From assembly GCF_020745735.1 (NCBI RefSeq), contig NC_083409.1, positions 11,835,052-11,899,051 of the forward strand: a DNA stretch of 64,000 nt. Reading direction: 5' to 3'. The DNA is from Hemiscyllium ocellatum. Taxonomy: Eukaryota. The notes below the pieces were generated by a model. It was not told the origin of the DNA. It ran no database searches and saw only the letters and a program-made list of their open reading frames with translations. Made by a program: the position numbers and the translations under genes. Below, piece after piece: positions 706-43,821 of the stretch (the stretch's first letter is position 1; each line of letters starts with the position of its first letter).

Positions 706-1037
706 TGTCGGTGGGTTATGTAAAAAATGTCAGTGTCAAGTCGGTCATCATTAATGGAGATGGAGTGGTCCAGGAAGGGGAGAGTGGTGTCAGAGATGGT
801 CCAGGTGGTCATTAATGGAAATCTGTTTGGAATCTTGTAACCTCCAATGATTCCAGATCAAAGGGATCATTTGAAAGTGATTGATGATTGGCTGTCAGTA
901 TCCTCTACAATGGATGTGTCATTGATTGACAGGCGAATAGCCAATTGTGACAATGCCATGCTGAAATGCAGCCAATCAGCTGAATGGAGTGGCCAATCTT
1001 CAAAGCGCACAGAGACAGAGACTGAATCTTCTTCATC

Positions 1038-1043
1038 TTTATT
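1038..1043 (-). terminator. Putative polyadenylation signal AATAAA of cluster 1 kappa transcript
   Basis: AATAAA on the minus strand ~530 bp after the C stop. The homologous position in cluster 2 is ATTAAA (54203-54208). Confidence 0.5.
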
Positions 1044-1569
1044 CCCCTTTCCAGATTGACATTGACAGAAAACAGACTGCAATTAACAGCCCAGACAGAG
1101 GAAGCTGCACAAATTCACAGCCACAATGGAGCTTGAGGAAAACACTTGTGGAGATTTTCTCAATAACATGAGAATCCTGTAAATTCAAACAGTGACAAAA
1201 CCTTAAATTGGAACTGGCGGCTGAGCAGGAAGGAGATCTGGTTTACTGAGGCAGAGAATTCTGAGGTTCACATTGTTTTGTACAGCTGACAGTCTTCAGC
1301 AACTTCAATAGATTTTACTTGGCATCACAAGTCAACTCTGTCCCCATCAAACGTTCCCAGAACAGGGACAGCATGGGGTTTGACACAGCGTAAAGCTCTA
1401 TCTACAGTGTCCCAATGAACCTGCCTTAACCCCTGAACCTCAGAAATGTCTCTAACCGGTCCTGAGAAGGAAGAGAGGTGAAATTCAGTGCTGACGATGA
1501 CCTTTGTCCTGCCAGCTCAGCCCTGTTCTATTTAAAGTTGTGTCTCCTCTGTGGACTGTCTTGAACACC

Positions 1570-1898
1570 CTACACACATTCTGATCTCCTGATGCTCTTG
1601 CTGAGGGGAGAGGGGAGGGTCACGTGAGTGAGGGCACAGGAGAAGTGAGCGTCGGACTCCCAGTCAGACCCAGAGAGAGTCAGCAGGCTGCTGACACTGT
1701 AGGTGCTGTCCGAAGCTCGCAGGTAGTTGCTGGTCTGAACCCCGTCCGAAATGACTGCACCATCCTTCTTCCACTGCACCTCCAGCTCATCGGGATAGAA
1801 GTGATTGGCAAGGCACACCAGGGTGGCAGTGCCCTTGGCATTGACCTGCTCCAGGGAGGGAGGCAGCAGGGTCAGCTTGGGCTGAGAGTTCTCACGGC
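1570..1898 (-). CDS. IGKC: Immunoglobulin kappa light chain constant exon (cluster 1), intact
   Basis: Acceptor ttgtctttcag| (AG at 1899-1900), phase 1. Reads (S)RENSQPKLTLLPPSLEQVNAKGTATLVCLANHFYPDELEVQWKKDG...STYSVSSLLTLSGSDWESDAHFSCALTHVTLPSPLSKSIRRSECV*. Both C1-set Cys, the Trp and the terminal Cys are present. Confidence 0.97.
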
Positions 1899-2039
1899 CT
1901 GAAAGACAAGAGAAACAATTTTAATCCCTGTTATTCGAAGGGATTTTAACTCTCTGAACATTCACCGGTAAAACAATCCGTTTGAACATTTGTAGCCAAT
2001 ACCTAACAAACCCCATAAATAAACAGGCATTGTTCAAAT

Positions 2040-2375
2040 TGCATCTTGGGATGTGAGTGTCACTGGCAGGATCAGCATTTATTACCCATCCCTAATCACC
2101 CAGAGGGCAGTTTAGAGTCAACCACATCGCTGTGGGTCTGGAGTCACATGGTAAGGATGGCAGTTTCCTTCCCTAAAGGACATCAGGGAATCAGATGGCT
2201 TTTCCTGACAATCAACAATTGTTTCATGGTCATCATTCGACACTTAATTGCAGATTGTTTTATTGAATTCACATTCCACCATCTGCTGCGGCAGGATTCT
2301 AACCCTGTCCCCAGATCATTAATCTGGATCTCTGGATGAACAGCTCAGCAATAGTACCATTAAATCATCACCTCC
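2040..2375 (-). mobile_element. SINE-like interspersed repeat (homologous copy 51705-52040, +)
   Basis: Reverse-complement match between the two copies; ~330 bp, no ORF. Family not firmly identified. Confidence 0.5.
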
Positions 2376-2479
2376 TTTATCTGATTTTTAGTTGAGAATG
2401 AAAGCAAGAAGTTTGTTTCTGAGCAGGGTGATTAGAAAAAGCACAACTGAAAGACTCCCAGTTCATCCCAAAAAAGATT

Positions 2480-3140
2480 AGTTCCTTAAAAGTGGAGTTG
2501 CAGGTAGGTAGGGGGGTGACGAAGTCATTTGGCATGCTTTCCTTTATTGGGCAGTGCATTGAGTGTTGGAGTTGGGAGCTGATGCACCTGTACAGGACAT
2601 TAATTTGGCCCCTTTTGGAATAATGTGTGGAATTCTGGCCTCCCTGCTGTAGGAAAAATGTTGGGAACCTTAAAATGGCTCAGAAAAGATTTCCAAGGAT
2701 GTTGCCAAGTTGGAGGGTTTGTGCGATCGGGAGAGGCTGAATAGGCTGAGGCTATTTTCCCTGGATCACTGGAAGCTGAGGGATGACCATATCGAGGTTT
2801 CTAACATCATGAGGGGCATTGATCAAGTGAATAGAGAAGATATTTTGTTCAGAGTGAAGGAATCCATAACTAGAGGGCATAGGTGGAAAGTATCAGGAGA
2901 ACGATTTAAATGGGAACTAAGGCATAACTTATTCCTGCCGAGGGTGGTACATTTTTGGAATGAGCTGCCAGAGGAAGTGGTGGAGGCTGGTATGATAACA
3001 TTTAAAATGCATTTGGATGTGTATATGAATAGGAAGGGTTTGGAAGGATATGGGCCAAATGCTGACAAATGGGACTAGATTAATTTCAGTTATCTGGTCG
3101 GCATGGATGAGTTGGACAGAAGGGTCTGTTTCTGTGCAGT
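2480..3140 (+). mobile_element. CR1-type LINE 3' fragment
   Basis: ORF 2710-3078 (RERLNRLRLFSL...RGHRWKV...RVVHFWNELPEEVVEAG) is the CR1 ORF2 C-terminus, followed by the 3' UTR. Confidence 0.9.
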
Positions 3141-3589
3141 ACATCTCTCTGACTCTATGTCTCTGTGGCTGGCATGGATGAGTCAGATCGAAGAGTCTGT
3201 TTCTAATTGTGACTCTAATTGTGCTTCAATCAAGCCCTCAGCACCTCAGCCTCTCCCAAAACATTTACATTTTGTTTCAAAACCAGTCACAGTTGCAATT
3301 TCAGGAAAGGGGCAGCCAATATCTACACAGCAAGATCCCACTGGAAGCAATGAGATCAAAGAGCATTCTTCATGATTTTGGTTCAAGGATAAATATTGGC
3401 CTGAACTCAACCCAAAGAGAAAGGAATTTGGTTCAGTTGGATGGAAATTGAGAAAATGGGGAAGGTAAAGGAGAAGGTAGGATTGTGGTTAGTGATGGGG
3501 TTGATTGTTACCAGAATATAAAAGGAAGGGACAGAAGTTTTTTGAATATCAAAGGGATCATAATAGTGCAAGGAAAATCAATAATAGAT

Positions 3590-5520
3590 CAAACTTAAAG
3601 ACTTTTTATTTAAATGCACGAAGCATTCCGAGTAAGGTAGAAAAATGATGTCACAAATCCAGGTAAATTGAGTTTCCAAGGAATTTAAACTAGTTAAAGT
3701 GGAGGAGGGCTCAGGAGACAATATTCTAGTTTCTAGAAGATGTAAAAGGAAAGAGAGTGTGGAAAGGATCAGGTATCAAACGTAAAGAACAGCAGATAAG
3801 GGGACAATGATGGGAAGGAGGGCAATCAATGCAGGACTGAGGGTGTTGTACTTAAGTGCACACAGTATACACAATGAGCTTGTAGTGCAGATTGAAACTG
3901 GCAGGTACGATGTTGTGGGTATCACAGAGACATGGCTGTAAGGGGATCAGGACTGGAACTAAATATCCAAGGATACATGTCCTATCAAAAGGACAGACAG
4001 ATAGGCAGAGGGGCAAGAGTTGTGTTGTTCGTAAGAAATAGCTTTAAATCAATAGCAAGAAGTGATACAGTCAGAAGGTGTAGAATCTGTGTGGGTAGAG
4101 TTGAGGAACCCAAGAAATAAAGAATCTGATGCAAGTTATGTTCAGGTCTCCAAGCAGTAACCAGGGTGTGGGGAAGAAAATCAATCAGGAGACAGAAAAG
4201 GGTAAAAACAATGACTGCAGATGCTGGAAACCAGATTCTAGATTAGAGTGGTGCTGGAAAAGCACAGCAGTTCAGGTAGCATCCGACGAGTAGTAAAATC
4301 AACGTTTCAGGTAAAAGCCCTTCATCAGGAATAGAGGCAGACAGCCTGAAGGGTGGAGAGAAAAGTGAGAGGAGGGTGGGGGTGAGGACAAAGAATCATA
4401 GAGTACAATAATTGAGTACAATAGGGGGTGGGAGGGTGGAGTGGATAGGTTGAAAAGAAGATAGGCAGGTAGGACAAGTTATGGAGACAGTGCTGAGCTG
4501 GAAGTTTGGAACTGGAGACAGAAAAGCCAAATATAAAATATTATCGCAGACTTCAATGGATAGGTGGACTGGATAGCGCATCTCAACAAAAGGCTTTCAT
4601 GGAATGTCTATGAGATTGTTTTTGAAACAGCTTGTGGTTGATCATTTGGAACAGGCAGTTCTGGATTCAGTGATGTGTAATGAGGCAAACTTGGTTAGTG
4701 AGCTGAAGATGAAAGTATCCCTCTGGATAAGTGACCATAATACGATAGAATTCCCCCTGTAGTTTGAGAGGGAGAAGCTGCAATCAGATGGAACAAGATT
4801 TCAATTGAGTAAAGGGAACGACAAAGACATGAGGAAGGAGCTGGCCAGAGTTGATTGGAAGGGGAGCCGAGCAAGTAAGATGGTGGGGCAGCAAACAGCA
4901 GAGTTTCTGGGGGTAATTCAGGAAGCAGAGCAGGAATTTATCCAAAAAAAGAAGAAACATAATAAGGGGAGAACAGTGTAACCATGGCTGATGAGGGAGG
5001 TCAAGGACAGCATAAAAGCAAAAGGAAAAGGCAGACAATATGGTGGAAAATAGTGGGAGGCCAGAGGATTAGGAAGTCTTTAAAACCTGTAGAGGATAAC
5101 TAAAAAAATTTCAGGGTACAGAAGGTGAAATGTGGGGAAAAGCGAGCCAGTAATATAAAAGAAGATTGGAAGAGTTTCACAAGATTTATAAAAATGAAGA
5201 GGGAGGCAGAAATAGACATTTGAAAAAGAATAATAGGAAAATGAAGAAAATGCCGAGGAATTGAATACATACATTACATCAGTCTGCACAATGGAAAACA
5301 CCAGCAATGTCCCAGAACTTCAAGACTGTCAGGGGGCAGAGGTGAGTGTAGTGGCCATCACTAAGGAGGAGGTACTGGGGAAGCTGAAAGGTCTGAATGT
5401 GGATAACTCACCCAGACTGGATGAACTACACCAGTGTGTTCTGAAGGAGATCACTGAGGGGATTGTGGGGACATTGGTGATGAGCTTTCAGGAATCAATG
5501 GAGTCAGGGTGTGGAGGTAT
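3590..5520 (+). mobile_element. Decayed CR1 LINE ORF2 (endonuclease to RT start), interrupted by a Penelope insertion
   Basis: Contains a YDVVGITETW-like endonuclease start (3905-3935), GSSDHNTIEF-like and KEEVLGKLKGLNVDNSP segments, with many frameshifts. Homologous to 48100-49300 on the minus strand. Confidence 0.85.
4201..4513 (-). mobile_element. 5'-truncated Penelope-like insertion with 13-bp target-site duplication
   Basis: TSD GGAGACAGAAAAG at 4188-4200 and 4514-4526. Terminus GTAAAAACAATGACTGCAGATGCTGG is shared with 21793. The empty site is at 48955-48967 in cluster 2. Confidence 0.85.
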
Positions 5521-5579
5521 TTTCTAAATAAGGAAAGCCTTTGGAGATCTAAAGCACAAACCTCATTCAGGTTTCTCTT

Positions 5580-6240
5580 AAGGTTAACAGGCAGGTCCAG
5601 TTTGTGCTTGGGAAGGCAAATAAAATGTTCGCATTCATTTCAATAGGGCCAGAATACAAGGGCAGAGATGTACTGCTGAGGCTGTGTAAGGCTCTGGTCA
5701 GACTGCATTTGGAATATTGTGAACAGATTTGGGACCCATATTCTAAGAAAAAATGTGCTGGCATTGGAGGGGTTTACAAGAATGATCCTGGGGATGAAAG
5801 GCTTGCCATATGAGGCGTGTTTGAGAACTCTGGGTCTGTACTCAATGGCGTTTAGAAGGATGAGGAGGGATCTTATTGAAATTTGCAGAATACTGATAGG
5901 CCTGGATAGAGTGGATGGGGAGAAGATGTTTCCAAAATCAGGAGAGACTAGGTAACCAAGGCACAGCCTCAGAATGAAGGGCCAACCTTTTAAACTGAGA
6001 TGAGGAGGAATTTCTTCAGCCAGAGGGTGGTGAATCTGTGGAACTCATTGTTACAGGGGGCAGTGGAAGCCAAGTCACTGAGTGTATTTAAGACAGAGAT
6101 AGATAGGTTCGTGATTGTTAAGGGGATGGAAAGTTCCTGCGGAGCAGGCAGGAGAATGGGGTTGAGAAGCATATCTGCCAAGGTCAAATGGCAGAGCAGA
6201 TTCAGTGGGCTGAATGGCTGATTTCTGATCCTATTTCTTA
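5580..6240 (+). mobile_element. CR1 LINE 3' fragment
   Basis: Contains YKGRDVLLRLCKALVRLHLEYC and RRNFFSQRVVNLWNSL motifs. Homologous to 46650-47330. Confidence 0.9.
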
Positions 6241-6359
6241 AAGTTTTCTGGAGAGTTTCCCCAAAACTCTGGAACACTGAACCCACTGGACTGTGAGCCC
6301 TGCTGTAGCTGTTTGTCATCAGAACTCTGCAAAGAGATAATCCAAAAGTGGAAAGAGTA

Positions 6360-7260
6360 TACATCCATGTGGGAACTTCAGAATGTTTCTCAGCTCCTGG
6401 AATACCATGAGTGCAGGAAGTGTGGTCAGTGACAGCAGTTGGAACTCCGGGGTTCGGAGCTTGAGCAGCAGCTGGTGTCAGTGCGGAGCGTCCATGAGGC
6501 TGAGAGCTCTGTGGAGAGCATGTTTCTAGATGTGGTCACTCTGCAGTTTCAGAGTATGCAGGGAGAGAGGGAATGGGGGAGCAGCAGACAGTCCAAAAGG
6601 ACCAGGCAGCTAGTACAGAAATCCCCTGAGTGCATCCCACTCTACAACCAAGATTCAGTTCAGAATCCTGATGAGAATGATGGTTCATCTGGGGAGTGCA
6701 ACCAGAGGCAAGTCCATGGCACCACGGGGGGCTCAGCTGTACGGGGTGGGGGGGGGGGGGTGCACAAGGAAGACTGGAAGAGCGATAGTGAGAAGAGATT
6801 CGAGAGTGAGGGCAATCGATAGGTGTTTGTGCAGCTGCAGATGGGAATCCAGGATGGTGTGTTGTCTCCCTGGTGCCATAGTCAAGGATGTAACTGATCA
6901 TCTGCAGAGCACCCTGAGGGGAGACGAGGAACAGTCAGCAGTAGTGGTCCACATCGGTCCTAGTGACAAAAGGAGACAAGTGGTCTTGCAGTCAGAAGTT
7001 CGGGAGCTTTGGAGGGAATTAGCAGCAGGAACTCAAAATAGGAGTCTCTGGATTATTCTCAATGCCCGATGCAGGTGAGAATAGAATCAAGAGGTGAACA
7101 CAGGTGATTGTGGGGCTGGAAAGAGGATCCATGAGGGAAGGTTTTAGATTATTGTGAGGTGGTTTACTCGTGCTGTTAGAGAGGGTTTAAACTAACTTGG
7201 CAGGACTGTGGGAGCCAGGAGGGAATATCAGAGAGGAACACCAAGGTCCACAGAATCCTC
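6360..7260 (+). mobile_element. CR1 LINE ORF1 fragment (zinc-binding/coiled-coil to SGNH-esterase-like region)
   Basis: Contains ELEQQLVSVRSV, MVCCLPGA.VKDV and AVVVHIG motifs typical of CR1 ORF1. Mirror copy at 45600-46510. Confidence 0.75.
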
Positions 7261-7498
7261 AGTGCAGTCAATAAGTCACCTCCTAGTGGGAAGGATGTGG
7301 AGGAATACAAATGCAAGGAGTTTACAGAGACCTGCAAATGTGATAGAGCCGTTATAAATGGGGTCGGGGGGGGTGGTGATCTTTAGTTTCTGAATATAGT
7401 TTGGGATAGCAGCAGTGTACTGGGCAGAGAGGTGCCTGAGTTGGGAGAGTGTGTTCAGGTGAATTTTCAGGAGGCATTGATGGCTCAGTGGTGGCTCA

Positions 7499-7806
7499 GG
7501 GGGTGCACCATGGTGGCTCAATGGTTAGCACTGCAGCCTCACAGCACCAGGGTCCCAGGATCGATTCCAGCCTTGGATGACTGTCTGTGTGGAGTTTGCA
7601 CATTCTCCCTATGTGTGAGTTTCCTCCAGGTGCTCTGGTTTCCTAACACAGTCCAAAAATGTGAATTGGCCATGCTAAATTGCCCACAGTGTTAGATGCA
7701 TTACAGAGAGGGAAATGGGTCTGGGTGGGTTAACTCTTCGGAGGATCGGTGTGGACTTGTTGGGCCGAAGGGCCTGTTTCCACACTGTAGAGAATCTAAT
7801 CTAATC
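7499..7806 (+). mobile_element. tRNA-derived SINE (HE1/V-SINE-like)
   Basis: A box TGGCTCAATGG, B box GGTTCGATTCC-like, core GGAGTTTGCACATTCTCCC, and a (CTAAT)n tail. At least six copies occur in the window. Confidence 0.85.
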
Positions 7807-7809
7807 ATT

Positions 7810-10210
7810 GGCTGTGAAAAGGGCTAATAATACAATGGAATCTTGACCAACTGGGCCAGTGGGCTGAGGAATGGCAGATGGAGTTTAATACAGATAAATG
7901 TGAGTGCTATATTTTGGTAAGACACAAGAGATGGGTGAGATCCCAAACAAATATTTCATGTCAGTGTTTATTGTGGAGAATGCCGGAGAATTTGGAAAAA
8001 TAGTGATGTCTTGAAAAGAGACCACATACAAATGAGGAGACGCAAAAGATCTTAAACACATAAGGTAGATAAACCCTAGGACCTGATCATGTGTATCCCA
8101 GAACATTGTGGGAAAGTAGGGAAGAGATTGCTGGGCCCCTTGCTGAGATATGTGTATCACTGACAACCATGGGTAAGGTGCTGGAGAACCAGAGAGGTTG
8201 GCCTGCCATCATTTGAGAAAGACTGTGAGGAAAAGCCAGGGAACTATAGACCAGTGAGCCTGATGTCAGTGCTGGGTAAGACGTTGGAGTGGATTCTGTG
8301 GGATAGGATTTACATTCTTTGGATAATCAATGTGGTTTTATGCATAGGAATTCATGTCTCCTGAATTTGATTGAGGAGGTGACAAAGAAGATTGATGAAG
8401 ACAGAACAGTAGACATTGTCTATATGGACTTTAGCAAAGTGTTTGACAAGGTTCCACATGATAGACTGGTTAGTAAGGTTAGGCCGCATGGGATCTGGGG
8501 GAGTGAGCCATTGGGGTAAAAAAATTGGATTGAAGATAGGAGACAGAGTGTTGGTAAAGGGTTGTTTTTCAGACTGGAGATCTGTGAATAGCTGTGTGCC
8601 ACAAGCATTGGTGCTGGGTTCACTGCTTTTGTCATTTAAGTAAATGATTTGGATGTGAATATAGGAGTTACAGTAAGTTTGTAGATGACATCAAAATTGG
8701 TGGGAGAGTGGAGAGTGAAGTAATTCATCTCAGGGTACAGCGGGATCTTGATCAGATGGGGCAATGGGCAGAGGTGTAGCAAATGGAGTTCAGTTCAGAT
8801 AAATGTGAGATGTTGCATTTTGGAAAAGCAAACCGGGCAGGAGTTATACAGTTAATGGGAGGGCCCTGTGGAGTGTTGCTGAACAAAGAGACCTCGGGGA
8901 GAAGATGCAGGTGCATTATTCCTTGAAAGTGTGGTCACAGGTAGACAGGGTGATGAAGAAGGTGATGGGTACACTTGCCTTTATTGGTCACTGCATTGAG
9001 TACAGGAGTTGGGACATCATGTTGCAGCTGAACAGGAGATTGGTGAGGCCACTTTGGGAATAATGTGAACAATTGTGATCATCTGCAATAAGACGGATGC
9101 TGTTAAACTTCAAAAGCTGCAGAAAATATTTACAAAGACATGGCCAGGAATTGGAGTGTTTGAGCGACAGGGAAAGGCTGAAGAAACTGGGCCTATTTGT
9201 CCTGCAGCATCTAAGGCCGAGGGGTGACCTTATAATTGTTTATAAAATCATGAGGGGCATGGACAGGGTGTATATCCAAGGTCTTTTCCTTGGGAAAGGG
9301 ATTCCAAAACAAGAGGGCATAGGTTTAAGGTGAGAGGCAAAAGATTCAAAAGGGACCTGAGGGGTAACTTGTCACACAGAGGGTGGTATGTGTATGGATC
9401 GAGCTGCCAGAGAAAGTGTTGGAGGTGGATACAATTACAGCATTTAAAACACATTGGGATGGGTACAGGGATAGGAAGGGTTTTGAGGGATGTAAGCCGA
9501 ATGCTGGTTAATAGGATGAGGTCAGTTTAGGAGATCTGGTTATCATGGACAAGTTGGACTGAAAGGTCTGTTTCCACACTGTATGACTCCATGACTATGA
9601 GAGGCTGGAAAAGCTGAGACTTTTTACTCTGATGCGTAAGAGTCTGAGGAGTGACCTTATAGAGGTTTATAAGATCATGAGGGTCATAGATAATGTGAAT
9701 AATTCCGGAAGGAGGTGACATTTTGTAGAAATGGCAAAAAATATTCCCGAAGGTTATTCCAGGGATGAGGAACATCAGTTATACAGATTGATTGGAGAAT
9801 TGGGGACTGCCTTCTTTGGAGAAGACTGAGAGATTTATTTGAGGAATTAAAACCAGGAGGGGCCTGGAGAGAGTAAATTGGGAGAAAATGTTCCCAATTG
9901 AGAAAGGATTGAGACTGAGAGACCACAGATTGAAAGTAATTGGGAAAAGTAACAACGTGAGATGGGGAACAACATGTTCAGCCAGTGGGTGGTTAAGGTG
10001 TGGAATGCACTGCCTGAGAATGTGGTGGAGGCAGCTTCAATTGAAACATTCCGAAGGGAATGAGACTATTATTTGAAAAGGAACAATGTGCAGGGTGACA
10101 GGGAGAAGGCAGGAGAATGACACTCAGTGAATTGTTCATTCAGAGAGCCAGTACAGACAGGATGGGTAGAATGGTCTCCGTGTGCACTGTAACAAATCGG
10201 TGATTGTGTG
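7810..10210 (+). mobile_element. Nested CR1 LINE RT and 3' fragments
   Basis: Contains YRPVSL, VDIVYMDFSKVFDKVPH and GDLIIVYKIMRG motifs, with several 3' tails. Confidence 0.9.
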
Positions 10211-10480
10211 ATTGAGCAGAGTTAAAGCTGGGGGAGGTGGGAGCTCGGTGTCTCACTGTGCTGCTGCTGCTGCTGCTGCTGAGGTCAGTGAGACCAGAGA
10301 CTGGGACAGGGAGCCAGAGCTCACATCAAACTCTGCCTGTGTCCGTCACACTGAGACTGGCAGGAGGCTACTCACTGATTTCACTCCATGCTGCAGGAAT
10401 GGGACCACAGGCTGCAAATGGACAGAGCTCCTCCACACGGTGAGTAAAACTGACTGACTTATATCTTGTTTTTTAAAGGG
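10205..10480. other. Conserved non-repetitive J-C intron block with (CTG)7, antisense leader-like ORF and RSS-type heptamers
   Basis: ~95% identical by hand to 43590-43875 and 61472-61757, versus ~80% for the adjacent J-proximal intron. Function unknown; see findings. Confidence 0.6.
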
Positions 10481-10653
10481 AGCAATGGGATTAATGAAAT
10501 ACAGCTGGACACCCTGTTAGACACAGTGCTCCTCAATCAACCATTTCATTCACTGCAGCTCCCCATTAACACCTTCAACAATTCGGCATTTGTGTTTTAA
10601 AAGGTTGCTTCAGTACTGAAAGGGTTAATAACAGAGGATGGAGGTTTACTTAC

Positions 10654-10990
10654 TCAGTCTGAGCTTGGTTCCTTTACCGAACGTATAGAGTGGAGCTGCT
10701 ATACTTGTTGTTCTGACAGTAATAGTCAGCGACATCCTCATTCTGAACGTTGCTGATTGTCAGGGTGTAACTGGTCCCTGATCCACTGCCGGTGAATCGA
10801 TCGGAGACTCCTGTGAATCGATATGTTGCAGCATAGATCAGGAGAGAGGGTTTCTGATCTTCTCGCTGCTGGTACCAAGCAAGGTAGCTGCTAATGCTTT
10901 GACTGGCCGTACAGGTGATGGTTGCGGTCTAGCCCTGTCCCACTGACAGCACCGGGGGAGACTGGGTCATGATGATGTCCCCATTGATAC
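10654..10990 (-). pseudogene. IGKV: Germline-joined Ig kappa V-J exon, cluster 1 (pseudogene)
   Basis: Acceptor cccctcag| at 10991. Reads [88 protein letters not shown], then directly J (TATACG TTC GGT AAA GGA ACC AAG CTC AGA CTG A|gtaagt; [11 protein letters not shown]). There is a TAG at 10929-10931, and 28 nt between the Cys codon and J put J out of frame. Confidence 0.95.
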
Positions 10991-11176
10991 CTGAGGGGTC
11001 AGAGAGAAACACAGTGAAGTCAGAACTGTCACAGAAAGAGCCTGTCAAATGAGAGATTGTTGGAGACACTGAGCATTCCTCTGGTTTCAGCATTTTCCCT
11101 TCAATCACAAGTCAGTGGAATTGGAGTGAAATGGAGAGCAGCGAAAGATTCAAGGTGGAAGGAGAGAGATTTGTAC

Positions 11177-11225
11177 CTGCGACACAGAATGCCAGGGGCC
11201 AGATCAGCTGGATGTGTGTAATCAT
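11177..11225 (-). CDS. IGKV: Ig kappa V leader exon, cluster 1 (intact exon of a pseudogene)
   Basis: ATG ATT ACA CAC...GTC GCA G|gtac encodes MITHIQLIWPLAFCVA(G). It is 49 nt, has a phase-1 donor and is followed by a 186-bp intron. Confidence 0.93.
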
Positions 11226-11285
11226 GGTGTGTGCTCCTATCCCTGAGTCTGGTTCCTGATAAACTCTCCCTTCACTGGGCTCTGC

Positions 11286-11382
11286 TTTATAAAGCTGCAG
11301 CCTGTGAGAGTCTGACTGGGTGTTCCTCAGGATGTAAATGGCATCAGGCAGAGAGAGCCACGTCAGCCCCTCACACTTCCTC
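11286..11382 (-). promoter_or_regulatory. V-kappa promoter, cluster 1
   Basis: Minus strand: GAGGAAGTG (ETS/PU.1-like, 11374-11382), TGACGTGG (CRE-like), octamer variant ATTTACAT (11332-11339) and TATAAA (11286-11291), ~60 bp before the ATG. Confidence 0.75.
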
Positions 11383-11384
11383 TT

Positions 11385-12414
11385 CTCTCTCTCTTGTCCT
11401 TCATTTTCATACTTCCTTTCTCCCTTTTCCCTTTTTTCTCTTTCTCACATTTCTCTTGTATATATTCCTGTTATTCGTTGACTTTCTCCCTCTTTTTCTA
11501 TTTCCGTCTCTGACTCTGTCCTCTCCCAATTATATAACTACTTATATCTTTCCCTTTTTCCATGTATGTTTGACATTCTGTTTATCTCCATTTCCTTCTG
11601 TGTTGATTGGTCTCTCTCTCTTTCTTATAATTTATTCTTCTCCTTCACTATCTTTCTACCTAATTCCTCACTCGTTCTCTCCTTATATCCTCAATCTCTA
11701 ATTGCCTCACTCTCTCCTTGTCTGTCTCCCTCCCTCCAGTCACTATCTAACTGATCTCTATAACAGGCATTATTCCAGGACATCGGAACAGTGAGACCTG
11801 GGGCAGCAATTAAATGCCTCGCCCTCTCTCACTCAATCTCACAATGTACACTTTCTCACTTTCTCTCTCTCTCTCTCTCTCTCTCTGTCTTCTGTCTCTC
11901 TCTCAACCAGAAGCACAATGACAAGTCTGTACTGGGCATCAATGATCTAACAACACCAATCCCAGCTTGGCATTGAGGGAGAGGATCAACCATGATCATA
12001 TTGAATGACAGAGCAGCCTCACAGGGCCAATCCCTATCCCTAATCCTAACCCTACTGCTGCTCCCTGTTTCTATCTTTTTATGTCTGTGTAATCTCCAAT
12101 CTCTGCCCCAGGACATTGATCCCTCTACTCATGGAAAACATTGCCTTTCTTTCCACCCTATCTCTGCCCCTCATAATCTTATAGCCCTTCAGCAGGTTCC
12201 CTCTCAACCTTCACTGCTCCAAGAGAAACAATCCCAGCCTTTCCAATCCTTCCTCATAACTCAGACTCTCCAGGCCAGGCAGCATCCTGGGAAATCTCTG
12301 CACCCTCTTGAGTACAGTCATATCCTTCTCATAACGTGGTGACCAGAACCTGTCAGTCTGTCTCTCTATCAGTAGATTCCCTTTACTCCTAGTCTCACAC
12401 CTGCTCTGCATCTT

Positions 12415-12470
<56 letters not shown>

Positions 12471-12720
12471 CCCTCTCTCCCCTCTCTCTCTCAGTCACAC
12501 TGTCTCATACTCTATCTCGCTCTATCTCTATTCTTCAACTCCACCATCTCTACCTCTCTCTCTCCCCCCCTTTACTCATCCTACACCGCCTCAGACTCTT
12601 TATCCCACTCTCTCTCACTTTCATACCTTGTCCTTCTATGTCTCTCTCACCAACAGTCTCTCTCTCTCCCTCGCACTCACACTCTCTCCCTCTCTCTGCC
12701 TTTCCAACAATGTCCCAAGT
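11385..12720. repeat. Pyrimidine-rich low-complexity / (TC)n microsatellite region with embedded LINE fragment
   Basis: Long TC/CT runs (e.g. 11863-11902, 12420-12500); a CR1 piece lies at ~12100-12350. Confidence 0.85.
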
Positions 12721-13172
12721 GGTAAAATACAGGGAAAATCTGCTCCAGCTCTACCCCACTAATGGATGTTAACCCTTGACACCAAGAGTATGTCTACTCC
12801 TGGACAAAAGCCCCATTTCCCACATTGACCAGGATTTGTCCTCTGTCAGGAAGACGGTCAGTTTCTTGACAAATCAAGGGCAATTCTGTGCTGTTGGTCT
12901 ATTCTCCCTGGGGACTGGTTTGGTTTGGACACAAACCTCATTCCATGAAGGCCCAGCAGAGAGAGGAGATCCTCAGGCTATCAGTGTGAGCTGGAGGGAT
13001 AGGACAGGCTCTGACCCACTGACCCATCCTGTCCATTCACAACATATTCCAATCCTTTCCCCTCACCTTCCCCTTCCATGTTCAAGCTCGAGTTTCACTG
13101 GGATGAGGATTGGACCATCACACGGTTACTACTGAAAGGAAATGAGCCCCACACTCACCACGTTATCCATGT

Positions 13173-13436
13173 CCCACTGGACTGTCCAATGGACACCAGT
13201 AAGCATGGAATTCATTCCCACTGAACTCTCCAATAGAGACCATTAAACAGGTGCCTCTTTGCCACTGGAGCCTCCAATGGAAACCAGTAAAGATGGATCT
13301 ATTTCCCACTGAATACTCCAGCAGAGACTAGTTAACATGGAGCTTATTCCTGTTGGGCTCTCCAATACAGACCAGGAACGATGTGACTCTTTGTGACTGG
13401 ATCCTCCAATACAGACCAGTAAACAAGGATCTCATT
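13173..13436 (+). repeat. 44-bp degenerate tandem repeat, 6 units
   Basis: Units start at 13173, 13217, 13261, 13305, 13349 and 13393; consensus ~CCCACTGGAnCCTCCAATAGAGACCAGTAAACATGGAnCTCnTT. More decayed units lie at ~14500-14680. Confidence 0.85.
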
Positions 13437-13740
13437 GCCTTCGCAAGATTGAACTTCGGAATGAGGAGCAGGAATAGGTAAATCAACCCTTCAAGCCCCT
13501 TTCCTATTTAACATGATCATGGCTGAACTTAACCTCCTCTCCACTTTCCAGACTGCTACCTATTGCCCTCTATCCTGCTTTTCATCAGAAAGATATCTGT
13601 TTCTTTCTTGAATCTGTTGATTGATTCTGCCTCCATTGTGCTTAGGGAAGGGGGTCGGGGGGAGTGGGGAGGGGGCTGGGAGAGGTTGGTGGTGGTGTGC
13701 ACTGACATCCACAGATTCACAACCCTCTGAGAGAAGTAGT

Positions 13741-14080
13741 TGGAATGGAACAGATTCCATATAGTATGGAAACAGGCCATTCAGCCCAACAAGTCCACAC
13801 TGACCCTTCAAAGAACATTCCACCCAGAGCCATTCCCGAACCCTTTCCCTGTAAACCTACATTTCCCATGACTAATGAATCTAACCTACACTTTCCTGGA
13901 CACTATGGGTAAATTAGCATGGCCAATCCTCCGAATGTGTACATCATTAGACTGTGGGAGGAAACCGGAGCACACAGGGGGAGAATGTGCAAACTCCATA
14001 CAATTGCCCGAGGGTGGAATTGAACCTGGGTCCCTGGCACTGTGAGGCAGCAGTGCTCACCACTGCACCACTGTGCCACC
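13741..14080 (-). mobile_element. tRNA-derived SINE (HE1-like)
   Basis: Reverse complement of the SINE at 7499-7806. Confidence 0.85.
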
Positions 14081-15604
14081 TGTAGTTTCTCTTCATCTCA
14101 GTTTTAAACATACCTCCTCTCACTCTATATCTATGACCTATTGTTTGAGACTGGCCCACAAGAGAGAACATCTGTTCCATGTCCGCCCTATCAATCCCGT
14201 TGAGCATCTTATATACTTCACTCCGATCCCCCCTTCATGCGACTGAATTCCAGTGAGTACAAGCCCGAGCTATTCAACCATTCCTCATATGTCAGCCCTA
14301 TCATCCCGGGAATCAGTCTGGTGAACATCCTCTGAACTTACATCCAGTGCCACCATATCCTTCACCAAGTAAGGAGACCAAAACTGAACACAATGCTTCA
14401 GATGTGGTCTCACTAATGCCTCACAAATATTTCGTTAATTCTGTAATCCAGTCCTTTTTTTATAATAAATACCAAAATTCCAATTGCTGCAAGAAATGCC
14501 AACATTCCAATTCCATGGGACTCAATTGGAACCTCCAACAGAGATCAGGAAACATGGGCCTCCATCCCACTGGAATGTCCAATGGACAACAATAAGCCTG
14601 AGCTTCTTTCCCACTGGACCCTCCAGTATTGGAGCTTCAAACCCCACATCCACTCCATCACATAGGTCTCTTATTTCAAACTCCACAACATTGTCCTTCT
14701 CTGCTCTACATCAGCCCCTTGACTACAGACACTCTTATTCCTGCTCATCCCACCTCCAAACTCCATCATTCCGATGTCCTCTCTCAGCTTTCTCCATCTG
14801 TGCTCCATAAATTCCAAATTGTCTGGAATGAAATGGCCCCTTCCCTGTCTCACACCAAGGAGGAGATGGACAGATTTGATATTAGTAATGAGTTGCAAGA
14901 TTACGGAGAGTGGGTGTGGTCAGAATTGGTCAAATTGATGACGGCTTCTGCAGTTGAATATCCTGCTGGCTGGCTCCAGCCTTTTACACACAGAATGGAG
15001 AAGTGTGTATTGCAGGCATATATTGTAAAGTTCCATAGAATTAAACCTCAGCATCAAGTGTCCCTCAGGAGGGGAGAGAGAATGTTCAGGGTCCTGAGCT
15101 CCATTTCCCAGCCCAGGCAGTTTGACTCCCAGTGAATGAATGAGATGCCAACTTGGAGCCCAGATTAGGGGCAGTCTCTGCTGTGGACCCAAGTCGACAA
15201 GAGGCAACTGGAGATTGAACTGAAAAGGAAAGATTTGCTGGGTTATGGGGAGAGAGAGGGCAGTGGGACTAATTGGATCACTCACAGACACCATGGACCG
15301 AATGGCCTCCTCCTGTGCTGGGGGTGGGAGGGGGTGGGCAGATTTAGGACAAAATTGAGAAGGAACTTCTTCACCCAGAGGGTGGTGAATCGATGGAATT
15401 CCCTGCCCAGCGAAGTCGTTGAGGTTTCCTCAGTAAATGTTTTTAAAGCTGATATAGATAATTTTTTGAACAGTAAATGAATCAAGGGTTTTGATGAAAA
15501 GGTGGGTAGGGGGAGCTGAGGCCATGAAAAGATCAGCCATGATCTTACAGAATGGCAGAGCAGCCCAAGAGGCCAGAGAGCCTGCTCCTGCTCCTGGTTT
15601 TAAT

Positions 15605-15858
15605 GTTCTTATGTGCTGTCAGATTCCAGGGAGTGCAGACAGTTCAGTTTTCTTCCGTCTCAGTAACAAACATCCAGCTGCTCTGAGCTCCTTATTTCAC
15701 TTCCTCTCTTGGTGAAGTTTCAACCTTGCGATCTGACAGTCTTTGCAGTTATTTTTTACACTGGGGCTTTCTGCTGTGGTCAGAATTTCTAATAATAAGT
15801 GTCCAATCAGTGACAATCACAGCAGCTAAGAGCAGTCAGGACTGAGGAGCCAGGCTCA
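15605..15858 (-). promoter_or_regulatory. Candidate B-cell regulatory module (CCAAT/Y-box, EICE, E-box), cluster 1
   Basis: TTTCACTTCCTC at 15695-15706 is GAGGAAGTGAAA on the minus strand; CTGATTGG and CAGCTG are also present. ~93% identical to 36897-37146. Confidence 0.55.
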
Positions 15859-15960
15859 CTGGGAAACACATTGGGAAGATCAAAGCCATCCTCTTCAGCT
15901 CCCGGTACAACCTCCATCCCTCTCCCTGAGCACTGTCTGCTGCTCAACCAGACTCTTTAC

Positions 15961-16198
15961 AAAAACAGAATACCTCAGCAGGTCTGGCTGCATCTGGGGA
16001 AAGAAATCAGAGTTAACCTTTCAGATCGAGTGACCCTTCTTCAGAACAGTTCTGAGAAGGTTCACTTGTCCCAAAATGTTAACTCTGCTTTCCCTCCACT
16101 GATGATGTCAGACCTGCCGAGCTTTTCCAGCAATTTCTGTTTTTGCTCCTCATTTGCAGCATCTGCAGCTTTTTCAGCTTTTATTTAGTACCGGATTC
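15961..16198. mobile_element. Palindromic (inverted-arm) Penelope-terminus-derived insertion
   Basis: Arms ~15962-16045 and ~16050-16145 are reverse complements around CAGAACAGTTCTG. Imperfect TSD (T/C)TTACAA. Absent at the homologous site 36798-36805. Confidence 0.65.
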
Positions 16199-16199
16199 C

Positions 16200-16560
16200 T
16201 TACAATCTTGGCCTCATCTTTGAGGCTGATCTGAGCCCCAAATCCTCCACAGCACAGAGATCACTCACTGAAAGTGCCAGCCGTTGCTTTGGGACTCCAA
16301 ACGTGATCATTCTAATGTTGTCCTGGGCCACATCACGGTCACTGCCCTCTGTAAACTACAGCTCACCCCAAACTGTGCTGCCCGTATCCAAACTCGCAAC
16401 AAATCCCATCCACATTCCCCACCGTCCTCACTGAGCGACATTGGCTCCTGGTCCAAACCAACACCTCAATGTTCAAATTCTCGTCCTTGCTCTGAAGTCC
16501 CTCCTTGTCCATCCACCCTCCCCATCTCTGTAACCTCCTCCTAGCTGCCTCACTCAGTGT
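16200..16560 (+). mobile_element. L2-type LINE fragment (mirror copy ~36440-36790, -)
   Basis: Contains KLQLTPNCAARIQTR and a QILVL-like segment resembling the L2 ORF2 C-terminus. Confidence 0.6.
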
Positions 16561-16789
16561 GGTCAGCAATCTTGGATATATGGCTCTCTATTCCTTCATC
16601 CAAGACATTAAGAAATACTGTGAAGTGCTAAAGTCCCAGGATGGATCCCTTGGCACACCACTATTCACCTCTTGCTCATTGTCCCCTCACTCTGTCTCCT
16701 ATCTCCAAAGTAATTCCTAACTCAAGGCAAATATTTTTATCTAATTCAATATGTATCCACGTTGATGAACAATCTCTCAAACAGTGAAA

Positions 16790-19230
16790 CTCGAAGCAGG
16801 AATAGGCCATTCAGCCCTTCGAGCCTGTTCTGCCATTCAATATGATCATGGCTGATCATCCAACTCAGTTGCCTGTTCCTGCTTCATCCCCATAACCTTT
16901 GATCCCTATCATTCAAAGAATTGTATCGTGCCTTTCTGGAAAACATTCAGTGGTTTGAGCTGAGCTGCTTTCAGTGACAGAAACGTCTACAGGCTTCCTG
17001 TAGAATGAAAACATTTCTCTCCACCTCAGCCCTAAATATCCTTTCCCATATCCTTAAACCTTAATCCTTGATTCTGGACTCCCTCGTCATCAGGAACATT
17101 CTGCCTTGTCCTGTTAGGATTTTAGAGTTTTCAGTGTGACTCCCCTCAATCTTCTGACCTCCAGTGAATATAATCCTAACTGATCCAGTTTCTCATCAGA
17201 TCTAAGTCTAAGTGCTGTCATCCCAGGAATCAGTCTGGTAAACCTTTGCTGCCCTCCCTCCACAGCCAGAACATGCTTCCTCAGATAAGTAGACCAAAAC
17301 TGCACACAATATAATCATAAAATCGCACAGTACAGAAGTGGCCTTTCGACCCATTGTACCTGTACCATCCAAACTACAGTCAGCCTGCATTCATCCAACT
17401 TTCCAACACAAGGCCCATAGCTTTAAATGTTATGATATTTCAAGGGTTAATCCAAGTACTTTTTAAAGTCCTCCTCAACTACCAGCCCAGACAATGCAAA
17501 CCAGACCCCCACCACCCTCTGGGTGAAAACCTCCTCTTCAAATCCCCTCTGAAGCTCCTGTCTTTCACAGTGAATGTGTGCCAACTCCGAAGAAGAGGAA
17601 CAACTGCTTTCTATTCATTGTGTCCATTCCCCTCATACCCGTTTACACCTCTATCAGGTCCTCTCAACCTTCTCTGCTTCAAAGAAAACAACCCGAGTTT
17701 ATCCAGCCTCTCTTCATCACTGAAATGCTTCATCCCAAGCAACATCCTGGTGACTATTCTCTGCACCCCCTCCAGTACAATCCCATCCTTCCGATCACGT
17801 GGTGACCAGAACTGCACACAGTACTCCAGCTGTGGCCTAACCAAAGTTCTGTACAGCTCCAACATCTCTTCCCTGGTCTTCTCATCTGTACCTGAAATGA
17901 TAAAGGCAAGTGTCCCATATGACTTCATCAATACTTTATTCACCTGTTACATCGTCCAAAGTTCATCACCTCACATTCATCAGGGGTAAGTTCCATCTGA
18001 CTCTGATCTGCCCATCTGACCAATCCAGTTAGATCCTCGTGTAACCCAAGACCTTCTTCCTCACTGTCAACCATCTGCCAAACCTCATGTCATCTACAAA
18101 CTCAGTCATCATCCACCCACCCCCACCCCTCACCTCTCACATTTTCATCTTCATTGTTTCAATACATCCTGAACAATAAGGGACCCAGCACTGATCCCTG
18201 TGGTATCCCACTGCACACTGGGCCCAGTCACATAAACAAATTTCTGCCTCCACCCTCTGTCTCCTGTCACTGAACCAGTTTTGGTTTGAATATTCAGGTG
18301 TGGACTCACTAAGGCCCCATACAATTACAGCAAGACATCCCTGATCCTGTACTCAAATTCTCTCACTATAAAGGTAACATATCATTTACCTTCTGCACTG
18401 CCTGCTGCACCTGCACGCTGACTTTCAGTGACTGGTATACACGGACACAGGCATCCCTGCATCTTCTTCACTGCTCCCCCTTCCACCCAGCTTTGTGTCA
18501 TCTGCAAACTTGGAGATATTACTCTTAAGTTGCCTCATCTAAACCATGAACCAATATGTGACTAGCTGGATCCAGGCCTGTGGTACCTTTTCAGAAAAAG
18601 ATCTGTTTTTTTTTACTCTTTGTTTCCAGCCTGCCAACCACTTCTCTATTCATGTCAGTAGACTGCCCCCAGTCCCATGAGTCTTACTTTTATATGCTAA
18701 TTTCTACTGTGGGACTTAATAAAAGCCTTCTGAAGGTTCCAGATAAACCACATCCGTTGGCTCCCCCTTGTCAAATCTGCTCATTCCATCCTCGAACAAT
18801 TCCAGTCAATTTGTTAAGCATGATCTCCCTTTCACAAACCATGCTGACTCTGTCTAATCCTGTCACTGTCTTCCACGTGCCCAGTGATTAAATCTTTCAC
18901 AACGAACTTGACTATTTTTCCCAATACCAATGCCAGGCTGACTGGTCCAGGTTGCCCACTTTCCTTTCTCCCTCCCGTTTTAAACAGTGATGTTACATTC
19001 GCAACTCTCCAGTCACTGGGAAAGTTCCAGAATCGATAGAATCTTGAACACCAATGTTCCCCAAATTTTTGGGCAATTCCTGAAGTAATCTGAAATGTAG
19101 GTTATTGGTCCCTGCGGAGTTATCAAACTTTAATCCCATAAATTTTTGAAAACCATTTCCCGAATAAAACTAATTTTTTTCAGTTCTGCCCTCAGCCTAT
19201 ACCCTGTTGTCCCAACATGTTTCAAATGGA
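16790..19230 (-). mobile_element. Nested CR1 LINE fragments
   Basis: ORF 17611-17943 (LELYRTLVRPQLEYCVQFWSP) and other RT pieces. Confidence 0.85.
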
Positions 19231-30080: not shown

Positions 30081-30494
30081 ATTCCCAAGTGCCGTTCAAT
30101 GCTCTCAGTTCAACCGCATTACTGGTCAAGCTCCTTACATTGAAATATTTACAATTCAGCTTTCTGATCCTCCTGTATCCTGGATCGTGTCCTAGTGGTC
30201 ACTCAGTGGTTTTCTGCATTGCCCTTACTTTCCCATGAAGGGAAACATTGAGCATTAACTTTAGGGAATGTTAGACCAATTAGTCGGACATCAGCAGTGG
30301 AGAAAAAGCTCAAATTCATTATAAAATATTTTATAGCTTCGCACTGAGAAAACAGTGACAGAATTGGGCAGAGTCAGCATGGATTGTCAAAAGAAAAATC
30401 ATGCTTAACAAATCGACTGGACTTGTTTGAGGATGTAGTGAGTGGATTTGACAAGGGGGAGCCAGCGGATGTGGTTTATTTGGACTTTGTAAGG

Positions 30495-33400: not shown

Positions 33401-33900
33401 GGATGCTTTGGAGATGGTGCAGAGGAGCTTAACCAGGATTGTCTCATATGGAGGGCATGAGCTATGAAGAGAGGTTGAGTAGATTAGCATCATTTTCAAT
33501 AGAAAGTTGAAGATTGAGGGAGGACCTGCTAGAGGTCTACAAAATCATGAGAGCTATAAACATGATGGATAGCAAGAAGATTTTTCCCAGAGTGAGGGGT
33601 TCAATTGCTAGGGACCATGGGTTCAAGGTGAGAGGAGAAAGGTTTAGGGGAGATATGCGTGGAACGTTCTTTACGCAGAGAGTGGTTGGTACCTGGAACA
33701 CGTTGCCAGCGGAAGTGGTAGAGGCGGGCATGATAGCATCATTAAAGATGTATCGAGATAGATGCATGAATGGGCAGGGAACAGAGGGATACAGATCCTT
33801 GGAAAATTGATGATAGGTTGAAATTGAAGCTATGGATCAGTGCAGGCTTGGAGGGCCGAAGGGCCTGTTCCTGTTTTGTAATTTTCTTTGTCCCTTGTTC
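30495..33900 (+). mobile_element. Longest CR1 LINE in window (ORF1 esterase end, ORF2 endonuclease and RT, 3' UTR), decayed
   Basis: Contains VHVGRNDI (ORF1), YDVIAITETW, DHNS, DRSPGQDGIYPRVL...NYQAVSLTS (32157-32687), INKFADDTKIGG and a 3' tail at ~33880. Frameshifted. Confidence 0.92.
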
Positions 33901-33909
33901 TTGGACCTG

Positions 33910-42707: not shown

Positions 42708-42740
<33 letters not shown>

Positions 42741-42744
<4 letters not shown>

Positions 42745-42837
42745 AAGTGTGAGGGGCTGACGTGGCTCTCTCTGCCTGATGCCATTTACATACTGAGGAA
42801 CACCCAGTCAGACTCTCACAGGCTGCAGCTTTATAAA
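42741..42837 (+). promoter_or_regulatory. V-kappa promoter, cluster 2
   Basis: GAGGAAGTG at 42741-42749, TGACGTGG at 42758-42765, ATTTACAT at 42784-42791 and TATAAA at 42832-42837. Confidence 0.75.

Positions 42838-43789: not shown

Positions 43790-43821
<32 letters not shown>

What the first reader, a model, noticed from the sequence alone, without database searches (positions are those of the whole stretch)
10654..10730. V and J are pre-joined in genomic DNA, and the two mirror-image clusters carry different junctions
Seen: V runs directly into J in all three units, with no heptamer, spacer or nonamer. The cluster 1 junction is TGT-CAGAACAACAAGTATAGCAGCTCCACTC-TATACG (28 nt, J start intact). 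The cluster 2 and unit 3 junction is TGT-CAGCAG(G/C)ATTACAGCTGGCCT-TAC(G/T) (21 nt, 2 nt missing from J). Established: germline-joined Ig genes occur in cartilaginous fish, including nurse-shark NS4 kappa, and are attributed to RAG activity in germ cells. Inference: clusters 1 and 2 descend from one inverted duplication yet have unrelated junctions, so this may record two independent germline V(D)J events after the duplication, both non-productive (+1 frame).
Basis: partly seen in the sequence, partly recalled or inferred. Interest (0 to 1): 0.7.

Follow-up and report, generated by a model that had tools for sequence, protein, structure and literature searches.

The report
Two independent pre-joined dead kappa genes
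Three neighbouring shark antibody light-chain genes have their V and J pieces already fused in the genome, from at least two separate fusion events, and all three are dead; this kind of gene, broken copies included, was described in nurse shark in 2000, so it is a clean but ordinary example.

Summary
In all three units V runs straight into J, with no heptamer, spacer, nonamer or V-J intervening DNA anywhere in the window.

The "28-nt" and "21-nt" strings are not junctional nucleotides. They are the V-encoded CDR3 of two different V-end classes, 30 nt and 24 nt after the Cys codon. Both classes exist as split, RSS-bearing genes in Chiloscyllium punctatum. The 24-nt class also appears in contigs of public runs that match the window.

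The germline J read from those contigs is CACTGTG|GCTTACGTTCGG. So the J part starts at TACG in all three units, and J is not intact in unit 1. No N nucleotides are needed. Unit 1 lost 3 nt and units 2/3 lost 6 nt, with a CTT microhomology. An untrimmed join is +1 by coding-end phase, so both stay +1.

The inverted duplication is old. Each arm's upstream DNA is closer to a split C. punctatum cluster than to its partner arm. Two independent germline joins are therefore well supported. Units 2 and 3 share one join through a later duplication.

All three units carry further lesions. The kind is known (Lee et al. 2000). This scan has already reported several out-of-frame pre-joined kappa genes elsewhere in this genome.

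The parts
11177..11225 (-). Unit 1 leader exon (ATG at 11225-11223; GT donor at 11176-11175)
10686..10990 (-). Unit 1 V part of the fused V-J exon. It has a TAG stop in FR1 at 10931-10929. The last 30 nt (10715-10686) are V-encoded CDR3 of the 30-nt class, apparently untrimmed.
10654..10685 (-). Unit 1 J part (TACGTTCGGTAAAGG...CTGA). It lacks the first 3 nt (GCT) of the germline J and is read +1 from the V frame. The GTAAGT donor follows at 10653-10648.
1570..1898 (-). Cluster 1 kappa-type C exon (C1-set), open reading frame intact, about 8.8 kb downstream of J
42898..42946 (+). Unit 2 leader exon
43133..43397 (+). Unit 2 V part. It has a 9-nt CDR1 deletion (after 43217) and a 22-nt FR2 deletion (after 43237) that creates a TGA. 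The CDR3 belongs to the 24-nt V-end class and ends ...AGCTGGCCT.
43398..43429 (+). Unit 2 J part (TACGTTCTGAAAAGT...). The FGxG motif is destroyed, the donor is mutated to GTAAAT, and J is +1 relative to the V frame. The CTT at 43396-43398 could come from V or from J (microhomology).
53357..53685 (+). Cluster 2 C exon, intact, 104/108 aa identical to the cluster 1 C exon
61015..61279 (+). Unit 3 V part, with the same two deletions and the same junction as unit 2
61280..61311 (+). Unit 3 J part (TACTTTCTGTAAAGG...)
60257..60356 (.). A 100-N assembly gap. The unit 2/unit 3 direct repeat (42475-46117 = 60357-64000, 98.9% identical) starts exactly at its right edge, so the placement of unit 3 rests on scaffolding.
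824..18921 (-). Left arm of the old inverted duplication (cluster 1 plus its upstream region)
30299..54423 (+). Right arm of the old inverted duplication (cluster 2 plus its upstream region)

Best explanation
The window holds three kappa-type (NS4/type III-like) V-J...C miniloci of an orectolobiform-like shark. Each one's V and J were fused in the germ line by an ordinary RAG-type coding join. At least two separate joins are recorded. One is in the lineage of unit 1: a 30-nt V-end class, V end apparently untrimmed, and J short by 3 nt (or by 4 nt plus one P nucleotide). The other is in the common ancestor of units 2 and 3: a 24-nt V-end class, with a net loss of 6 nt across a CTT microhomology. 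That second join was then copied by a duplication of at least 3.6 kb. No N nucleotides are needed for either join. V coding ends are in phase 0 and the germline J carries 4 nt before ACG-TTC-GGT, so a join that loses 0, 3 or 6 nt is +1 out of frame. Both genes were therefore dead on arrival. They have since picked up further lesions: a TAG in FR1 of unit 1, and CDR1/FR2 deletions plus J and donor mutations in units 2/3. Shown here: the fusion, the lesions, the V-end classes, the germline J end, and the age of the two arms. Inferred: that RAG acted in germ cells, and that each join happened in situ.
For: Fusion without RSS or intervening DNA. Leader intron and J-C intron are kept, so these are not retrocopies of mRNA. 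Split relatives with canonical RSS: C. punctatum L001-L008. V-end classes: L001 has 30 nt ending TCTA|CACAGTG, which matches unit 1. L002, L003, L005-L008 have 24 nt and L004 20 nt; L003, L005 and L006 match units 2/3. Loose ends of contigs from public runs that match the window give the J heptamer CACTGTG followed by GCT and then TACG at 10685, and a split V ending AGCTGGCCTTGG|CACAGTG. Upstream tree: unit 1 groups with split L002/L003 and units 2/3 group with split L005/L007, both at 100/100. A clade of the three window units is rejected (AU p about 4e-50). A three-way upstream alignment gives unit 1 to L002 87% against unit 1 to unit 2 68%. Units 2 and 3 share the junction, both deletions and 98.9% identity. 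The unit 2 stretch is held at shares of about 0.4-0.5 by runs of four samples from two studies of one organism. Precedent and logic come from Lee et al. 2000, PMC2193156.
Against: No contig that bridges the unit 1 junction was listed for any run, and two runs have no depth there. Presence in several individuals or in non-lymphoid DNA is therefore not shown directly for unit 1. The V-exon tree alone does not reject a clade of the three units (AU p 0.09). The 750 nt downstream of J put units 1 and 2 weakly together (75/78). Unit 1 is thus a mosaic: one upstream class, with V, J and intron resembling the other class. Its fused V-J could have been acquired by conversion from a joined donor rather than joined in situ. 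The germline V end of the unit 1 lineage is known only from another species.
Confidence: 0.8

Rival explanations
1. There was one ancestral join. The two junctions then diverged by indels and substitutions, or one V end was later overwritten by gene conversion.
For: The J part begins at the same TACG in all three units and both junctions are +1. The V exon and the J-downstream trees do not separate units 1 and 2/3 with support.
Against: Turning the 30-nt end into the 21-nt end needs a 9-nt loss plus at least 8 substitutions that happen to recreate the germline 24-nt-class end AGCTGGCCTT, which is seen in split genes of two species. Conversion from a split donor cannot end exactly at the coding end, because beyond that point the donor has RSS and the recipient has J. 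In units 2/3 the shared TACG boundary is accounted for by the CTT overlap between V end and J start.
Confidence: 0.08
2. The joins happened elsewhere in the roughly 200-copy array and were pasted into these clusters by gene conversion or unequal crossing-over. There would still be at least two joins, but not in situ after the inverted duplication.
For: Unit 1 is a mosaic. Its upstream 1.3 kb groups with L002/L003, while its V (CDR1-FR3) is 92-93% identical to L005/L001 and only 78.5% to L002/L003. The family shows reticulate similarity.
Against: No donor is known. The mosaic boundary could predate the join.
Confidence: 0.12
3. The fusions are somatic (lymphocyte) rearrangements or assembly chimeras that entered the consensus.
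For: The tissue source is unknown, and no bridging contig was listed for the unit 1 junction. Unit 3 starts at an N gap.
Against: Units 1 and 2 lie on one gap-free stretch, 1-60256. Units 2 and 3 share a junction and two deletions across 1.1% divergence, which requires inheritance. All units carry old disabling lesions. Words of the unit 2 stretch are held by four samples from two studies. A single B-cell clone cannot dominate a genome consensus (inference).
Confidence: 0.03
4. These are relics of archaic V-J genes that were never split.
For: None specific to this window.
Against: The closest relatives of each part are split genes with canonical RSS. Each junction lacks nucleotides that are present at the split coding ends. 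Lee et al. reached the same conclusion for NS4.
Confidence: 0.01

Closest known systems
Germline-joined NS4 (type III, kappa-like) light-chain genes of nurse shark, R4, R7, R18, RE18, R6 and R19 (Lee, Fitch, Flajnik and Hsu, J Exp Med 2000, PMC2193156)
   Same: V-J is fused in genomic DNA, with leader intron and J-C intron kept. Split sisters carry RSS. Little or no N addition and a few nucleotides lost at the coding ends. Several independent joins occur within one family. Some joined copies are pseudogenes: R19 has a stop and one extra base in CDR3, and R6/R19 may share one join, as units 2/3 do here.
   Different: This is a different species, whose closest protein matches are Chiloscyllium punctatum at 84-87% identity. 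Here three joined dead copies sit side by side, two of them as partners of a head-to-head pair. Germline status is inferred from the assembly and from shared lesions, not from Southern blots or PCR of erythrocyte DNA.
Fully germline-joined light-chain families of skates and sharks (e.g. Raja erinacea type I/II, PMC2192082)
   Same: Fused V-J in every tissue.
   Different: Those are whole functional families that are always joined. Here the family is mostly split, and the joined members in this window are dead.
Split kappa clusters of Chiloscyllium punctatum (loci L001-L008, assembly GCA_003427335.1)
   Same: Same leader, leader intron (92-99% identical), V subfamilies, J and J-proximal intron. 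They supply the unjoined V 3' ends and J 5' ends.
   Different: They keep the 12-spacer V RSS, about 400-700 bp of intervening DNA, and the 23-spacer J RSS.

Membership tests
Germline-joined Ig light-chain gene of cartilaginous fish (NS4/type III/kappa) | V and J are contiguous in genomic DNA, with no RSS and no V-J intervening sequence | tested here: met
Germline-joined Ig light-chain gene of cartilaginous fish (NS4/type III/kappa) | Genomic gene structure is kept (leader intron, J donor, J-C intron, separate C exon), so it is not a retrocopy of rearranged mRNA | tested here: met
Germline-joined Ig light-chain gene of cartilaginous fish (NS4/type III/kappa) | Close relatives are split genes with canonical 12/23 RSS | tested here: met
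   C. punctatum loci; loose ends of contigs from public runs that match the window
Germline-joined Ig light-chain gene of cartilaginous fish (NS4/type III/kappa) | The junction looks like a coding joint: nucleotides lost from the coding ends, optional P/N nucleotides, no target-site duplication | tested here: met
   Unit 1 lost 3 nt from J. Units 2/3 lost 6 nt in total, with a CTT overlap. No N nucleotides are required.
Germline-joined Ig light-chain gene of cartilaginous fish (NS4/type III/kappa) | Present in non-lymphoid DNA and in several individuals | tested here: inconclusive
   The unit 2 stretch is held by four samples from two studies at shares of about 0.4-0.5. No bridging contig was listed for the unit 1 junction. 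Inheritance of the unit 2/3 join is shown by the duplication.
Germline-joined Ig light-chain gene of cartilaginous fish (NS4/type III/kappa) | Kappa-type V and C domains | tested here: met
   V-set and C1-set domains. Best named hits are Ig kappa V regions. Direct orthology to nurse-shark NS4 was not tested.
Independent germline joins (criterion of Lee et al. 2000: a joined gene's nearest relative is a split gene) | Joined genes group with different split genes | tested here: met
   In the upstream 1.3 kb, unit 1 groups with L002/L003 and units 2/3 with L005/L007. One clade of the three units is rejected, AU p about 4e-50. The V-end classes are 30 nt and 24 nt.
Independent germline joins (criterion of Lee et al. 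2000: a joined gene's nearest relative is a split gene) | The same result from the V-J body itself | tested here: inconclusive
   The V exon gives a polytomy, AU p 0.09. The J-downstream tree gives 75/78 for unit 1 with unit 2.
Somatic-hypermutation footprint (considered for unit 2) | Substitutions clustered over V-J and the J-proximal intron | tested here: met
   14 of the 40 unit 2/unit 3 differences fall in 431 bp (p 1.2e-4). Of these, 11 are derived in unit 2 and 2 in unit 3.
Somatic-hypermutation footprint (considered for unit 2) | Hotspot motifs (WRC/GYW, WA/TW) or the tandem substitutions typical of shark hypermutation | tested here: not met
   6 of 11 sites lie in a hotspot motif against 40% background, and none are tandem.

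The most novel reading that the evidence does not exclude
Germ-line V-J joining in this kappa array may be a low-processing reaction whose default product is +1 out of frame. V coding ends are in phase 0, often with an in-frame TGA/TGG, and J carries 3n+1 nt. Germ-cell RAG activity would then systematically kill clusters and would be a main route of pseudogene formation in the array. The one-sided cluster of substitutions over the unit 2 V-J could additionally mean that a fused, promoter-driven V-J attracts a local mutation process in the germ line.
Probability: 0.15. Interest if true: 0.5.

Novelty: new member of a known kind. Interest (0 to 1): 0.25.

Why it matters
The window adds a clean, sequence-resolved case to the evidence that RAG-type joining has acted repeatedly on shark light-chain clusters in the germ line. 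Here two separate events sit in adjacent clusters. It also shows how easily V-encoded CDR3 can be mistaken for junctional diversity when unjoined relatives are not at hand. The coding-end phase arithmetic gives a simple, testable reason why so many pre-joined kappa genes noted in this genome are one base out of frame. It does not change what is known about the phenomenon.

Tried and rejected
1. Read support for the unit 1 junction. The single read-laying run returned only short multi-copy unitigs and listed no piece bridging 10685/10686. That is neither support nor refutation. Its loose ends were still useful, because they gave the germline J and V ends.
2. Run search. No run holds more than 0.53 of the sampled words. 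For unit 1, other organisms hold as much as the likely source organism, so that share is not specific.
3. Recent gene conversion between units 1 and 2 as the cause of the 96-100% identity over promoter to FR1. Rejected, because C. punctatum clusters are just as similar there.
4. Trees of the V exon and of the J-downstream region. Too little signal, or mosaic signal, to settle independence on their own.
5. A hypermutation signature in unit 2. The clustering is real, but there is no hotspot enrichment and no tandem changes.
6. Notes search for unjoined J sequences of this genome and for the fraction of joined clusters. Nothing usable was returned.
7. Literature search for a genome-scale census of shark kappa clusters. 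None was found in the held library.

Full report
WHAT IS THERE

The window carries three light-chain units of the shark cluster type.

- Unit 1 is on the minus strand: leader 11225-11177, fused V-J exon 10990-10654, and C exon 1898-1570.
- Unit 2 is on the plus strand: leader 42898-42946, V-J 43133-43429, and C exon 53357-53685.
- Unit 3 is on the plus strand: V-J 61015-61311. It runs off the window.

The V pieces are V-set and the C exons are C1-set. The best named protein matches are Ig kappa V regions. The nearest are Chiloscyllium punctatum predictions at 84-87% identity.

THE OBSERVATION

In each unit the Cys104 codon is followed by a short CDR3 and then directly by the J motif and a splice donor. 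The J and FR3 motifs each occur three times, against 0.01 expected. Scans for 12-spacer and 23-spacer RSS give only chance-level hits. The V-J intervening DNA of four split C. punctatum clusters has no match anywhere in the window. The leader intron and the 9-10 kb J-C intron are kept, so these are not retrocopies.

All three units are dead.

- Unit 1 has a TAG in FR1 (10931-10929), and J is read +1.
- Units 2 and 3 share a 9-nt CDR1 deletion and a 22-nt FR2 deletion that creates a TGA. J is read +1 in both, and each has a damaged FGxG motif. Unit 2 also has a mutated donor.
- The C exons of clusters 1 and 2 are still open and are 104/108 aa identical.

UNJOINED RELATIVES AND THE ANATOMY OF THE JUNCTIONS

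Eight C. punctatum contigs were fetched through their predicted V proteins. They give split genes with canonical RSS.

Their V coding ends fall into length classes counted from the Cys codon. L001 has 30 nt, ending ...AGCAGCTCCAATCTA before CACAGTG. L002, L003 and L005-L008 have 24 nt, for example ...AGCTGGCCTTGG or ...CCTTGA. L004 has 20 nt.

Unit 1's 30 nt match L001 position for position: 24/30 identical, with the same final TCTA. The 21-22 nt of units 2/3 match the 24-nt class: CAGGATTACAGCT as in L005 and AGCTGGCCTT as in L003/L006.

The germline J starts seen in C. punctatum are GGACACG, GTTCACG, GCTTACG and GCATACG, always 4 nt before ACG-TTC-GGT.

The single read-laying run used contigs of four runs of the organism that best holds the window. 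It gave two useful loose ends. At 10685, contigs that match the J side continue into GCT and then the heptamer CACTGTG. At 10713, a contig that matches FR3 continues into a split V ending AGCTGGCCTTGG|CACAGTG.

So the J part starts at TACG in all three units. J is not intact in unit 1, and the two 'junction strings' are V-encoded.

- Unit 1 reads as V untrimmed plus J minus 3 nt. Equally, it could be J minus 4 nt plus one P nucleotide, T.
- Units 2/3 read as V ...GGCCTTGG joined to J GCTTACG across a shared CTT, a net loss of 6 nt.
- No N nucleotides are needed. This agrees with the low TdT signature that Lee et al. reported for germline joins.

Phase arithmetic explains the shared frame. V ends are multiples of 3 after the Cys codon, and J has 3n+1 nt. 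A join that loses 0, 3 or 6 nt is therefore +1. Both junctions keep that default frame.

HOW OLD IS THE MIRROR IMAGE?

Self-comparison shows an inverted duplication from about 824-18921 to 54423-30299. Identity is 76-81% between the clusters and 83-88% in the cluster bodies. There is a 91.5% island 4.5-5.9 kb upstream of each V. Identity reaches 96-100% only from promoter to FR1.

That last stretch is not evidence of recency. Unit 1 is 98.3% identical to C. punctatum L002 over leader plus intron, the same as to unit 2.

- In a three-way alignment of the upstream regions, unit 1 is 87% identical to L002 but 68% to unit 2 on the same columns.
- A tree of the 1.3 kb upstream of the leader puts unit 1 with split L002/L003 and units 2/3 with split L005/L007, both at 100/100. 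It rejects a clade of the three window units (AU p about 4e-50).

The two arms therefore belong to cluster classes older than the split from C. punctatum, and both classes have split members.

INDEPENDENT JOINS?

Lee et al. argued that a joined gene whose relatives are split must have joined on its own. By that logic, the upstream tree and the V-end classes call for at least two joins.

There are caveats.

- Unit 1 is a mosaic. Its V (CDR1-FR3) is 92-93% identical to L005/L001 but 78.5% to L002/L003.
- The V-exon tree is a polytomy that does not reject one clade (AU p 0.09).
- The 750 nt after J put units 1 and 2 weakly together.

The decisive argument is thus the V ends. Deriving one junction from the other would need a 9-nt loss plus at least 8 changes that happen to recreate the germline end of the other class. 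A conversion from a split donor cannot stop exactly at the coding end. A copy from a joined donor elsewhere in the array is not excluded.

Units 2 and 3 share one join. They have the same junction and the same deletions, and are 98.9% identical over 3.6 kb.

GERMLINE OR SOMATIC?

- Units 1 and 2 lie on one gap-free stretch.
- The unit 2/3 join has been inherited through a duplication.
- All units carry old lesions.
- Words of the unit 2 stretch are held at shares of 0.4-0.5 by four samples from two studies of one organism, against at most 0.16 in other organisms.

A junction-bridging contig for unit 1 was not listed, and two runs show no depth there. Direct proof in several animals is therefore lacking for unit 1.

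WHAT IS KNOWN

Lee et al. 2000 (PMC2193156) described about 50 nurse-shark NS4 genes, of which about 10% are germline-joined. They inferred at least five independent joins and found little N addition. They confirmed presence in erythrocyte DNA of unrelated animals. They also described joined pseudogenes, among them R19 with a stop and one extra base in CDR3.

Earlier notes of this scan list many other pre-joined kappa genes in this genome. Several are one base out of frame, and some sit beside split sisters.

VERDICT

The sequence observation is confirmed. The central inference, more than one germline join, is supported. The junction parse and the premise of a recent duplication are not. This is a new member of a known kind and of modest interest.

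Noticed in passing
window 43184-43510 (unit 2) against 61066-61392 (unit 3): 14 of the 40 differences between units 2 and 3 fall in 431 bp covering V-J and the first 80 nt of the intron (binomial p 1.2e-4). Polarised with unit 1, 11 are derived in unit 2 and 2 in unit 3. There is no enrichment at WRC/GYW/WA motifs (6/11 against 40% background) and there are no tandem changes. The cause is open: a short conversion tract from an unseen cluster, a local mutation process, or consensus error.
   Followed up: partly
window 60257-60356: A 100-N gap. The unit 2/unit 3 repeat begins exactly at its right edge, and nothing left of the gap matches the upstream of unit 2. Unit 3 could be a true tandem copy or a misplaced allelic contig.
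   Followed up: partly
window 11225-10991, 42898-43132, 60780-61014: Leader plus leader intron is 92-99% identical among all paralogues and across species (unit 1 to C. punctatum L002 is 98.3%). This is far above the neighbouring upstream DNA and J-proximal intron (73-93%). It suggests constraint or strong homogenisation on a non-coding intron.
   Followed up: partly
window 15612-15963 and 36797-37146; L002:3268-3615: An island of 91-96% identity between the two arms and a C. punctatum cluster, inside otherwise 73-85% identical upstream DNA, 4.5-5.9 kb 5' of each V. It is a candidate regulatory module, and another reader noted an ETS-IRF element here.
   Followed up: partly
window 11395-12400 against 41700-42728: There are two structural classes of V-upstream DNA. 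Unit 1 shares its class with C. punctatum L002/L003/L006, and units 2/3 share theirs with L005/L007. Yet unit 1's V, J and intron resemble the L005/L007/L001 type, so unit 1 is a recombinant mosaic.
   Followed up: partly
L005:2355-2360, L006:3247-3252, L007:937-942 (C. punctatum): Several split V genes end in an in-frame TGA directly before the heptamer. All seen J segments carry 4 nt before ACG-TTC-GGT. An untrimmed join is therefore both stopped and +1 out of frame, so trimming is obligatory for a productive gene.
   Followed up: partly
window 1570-1898 and 53357-53685: Both C exons are still open reading frames (4 aa differences in 108), although their V-J exons are dead. At about 6% DNA divergence this is not by itself evidence of selection.
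   Followed up: no
window 10259-10283, 43780-43812, 61662-61694: A CAG/CTG triplet run in the J-C intron differs in length between units: three more repeats in units 2/3. It lies inside the antisense reading frame that another reader noted.
   Followed up: no
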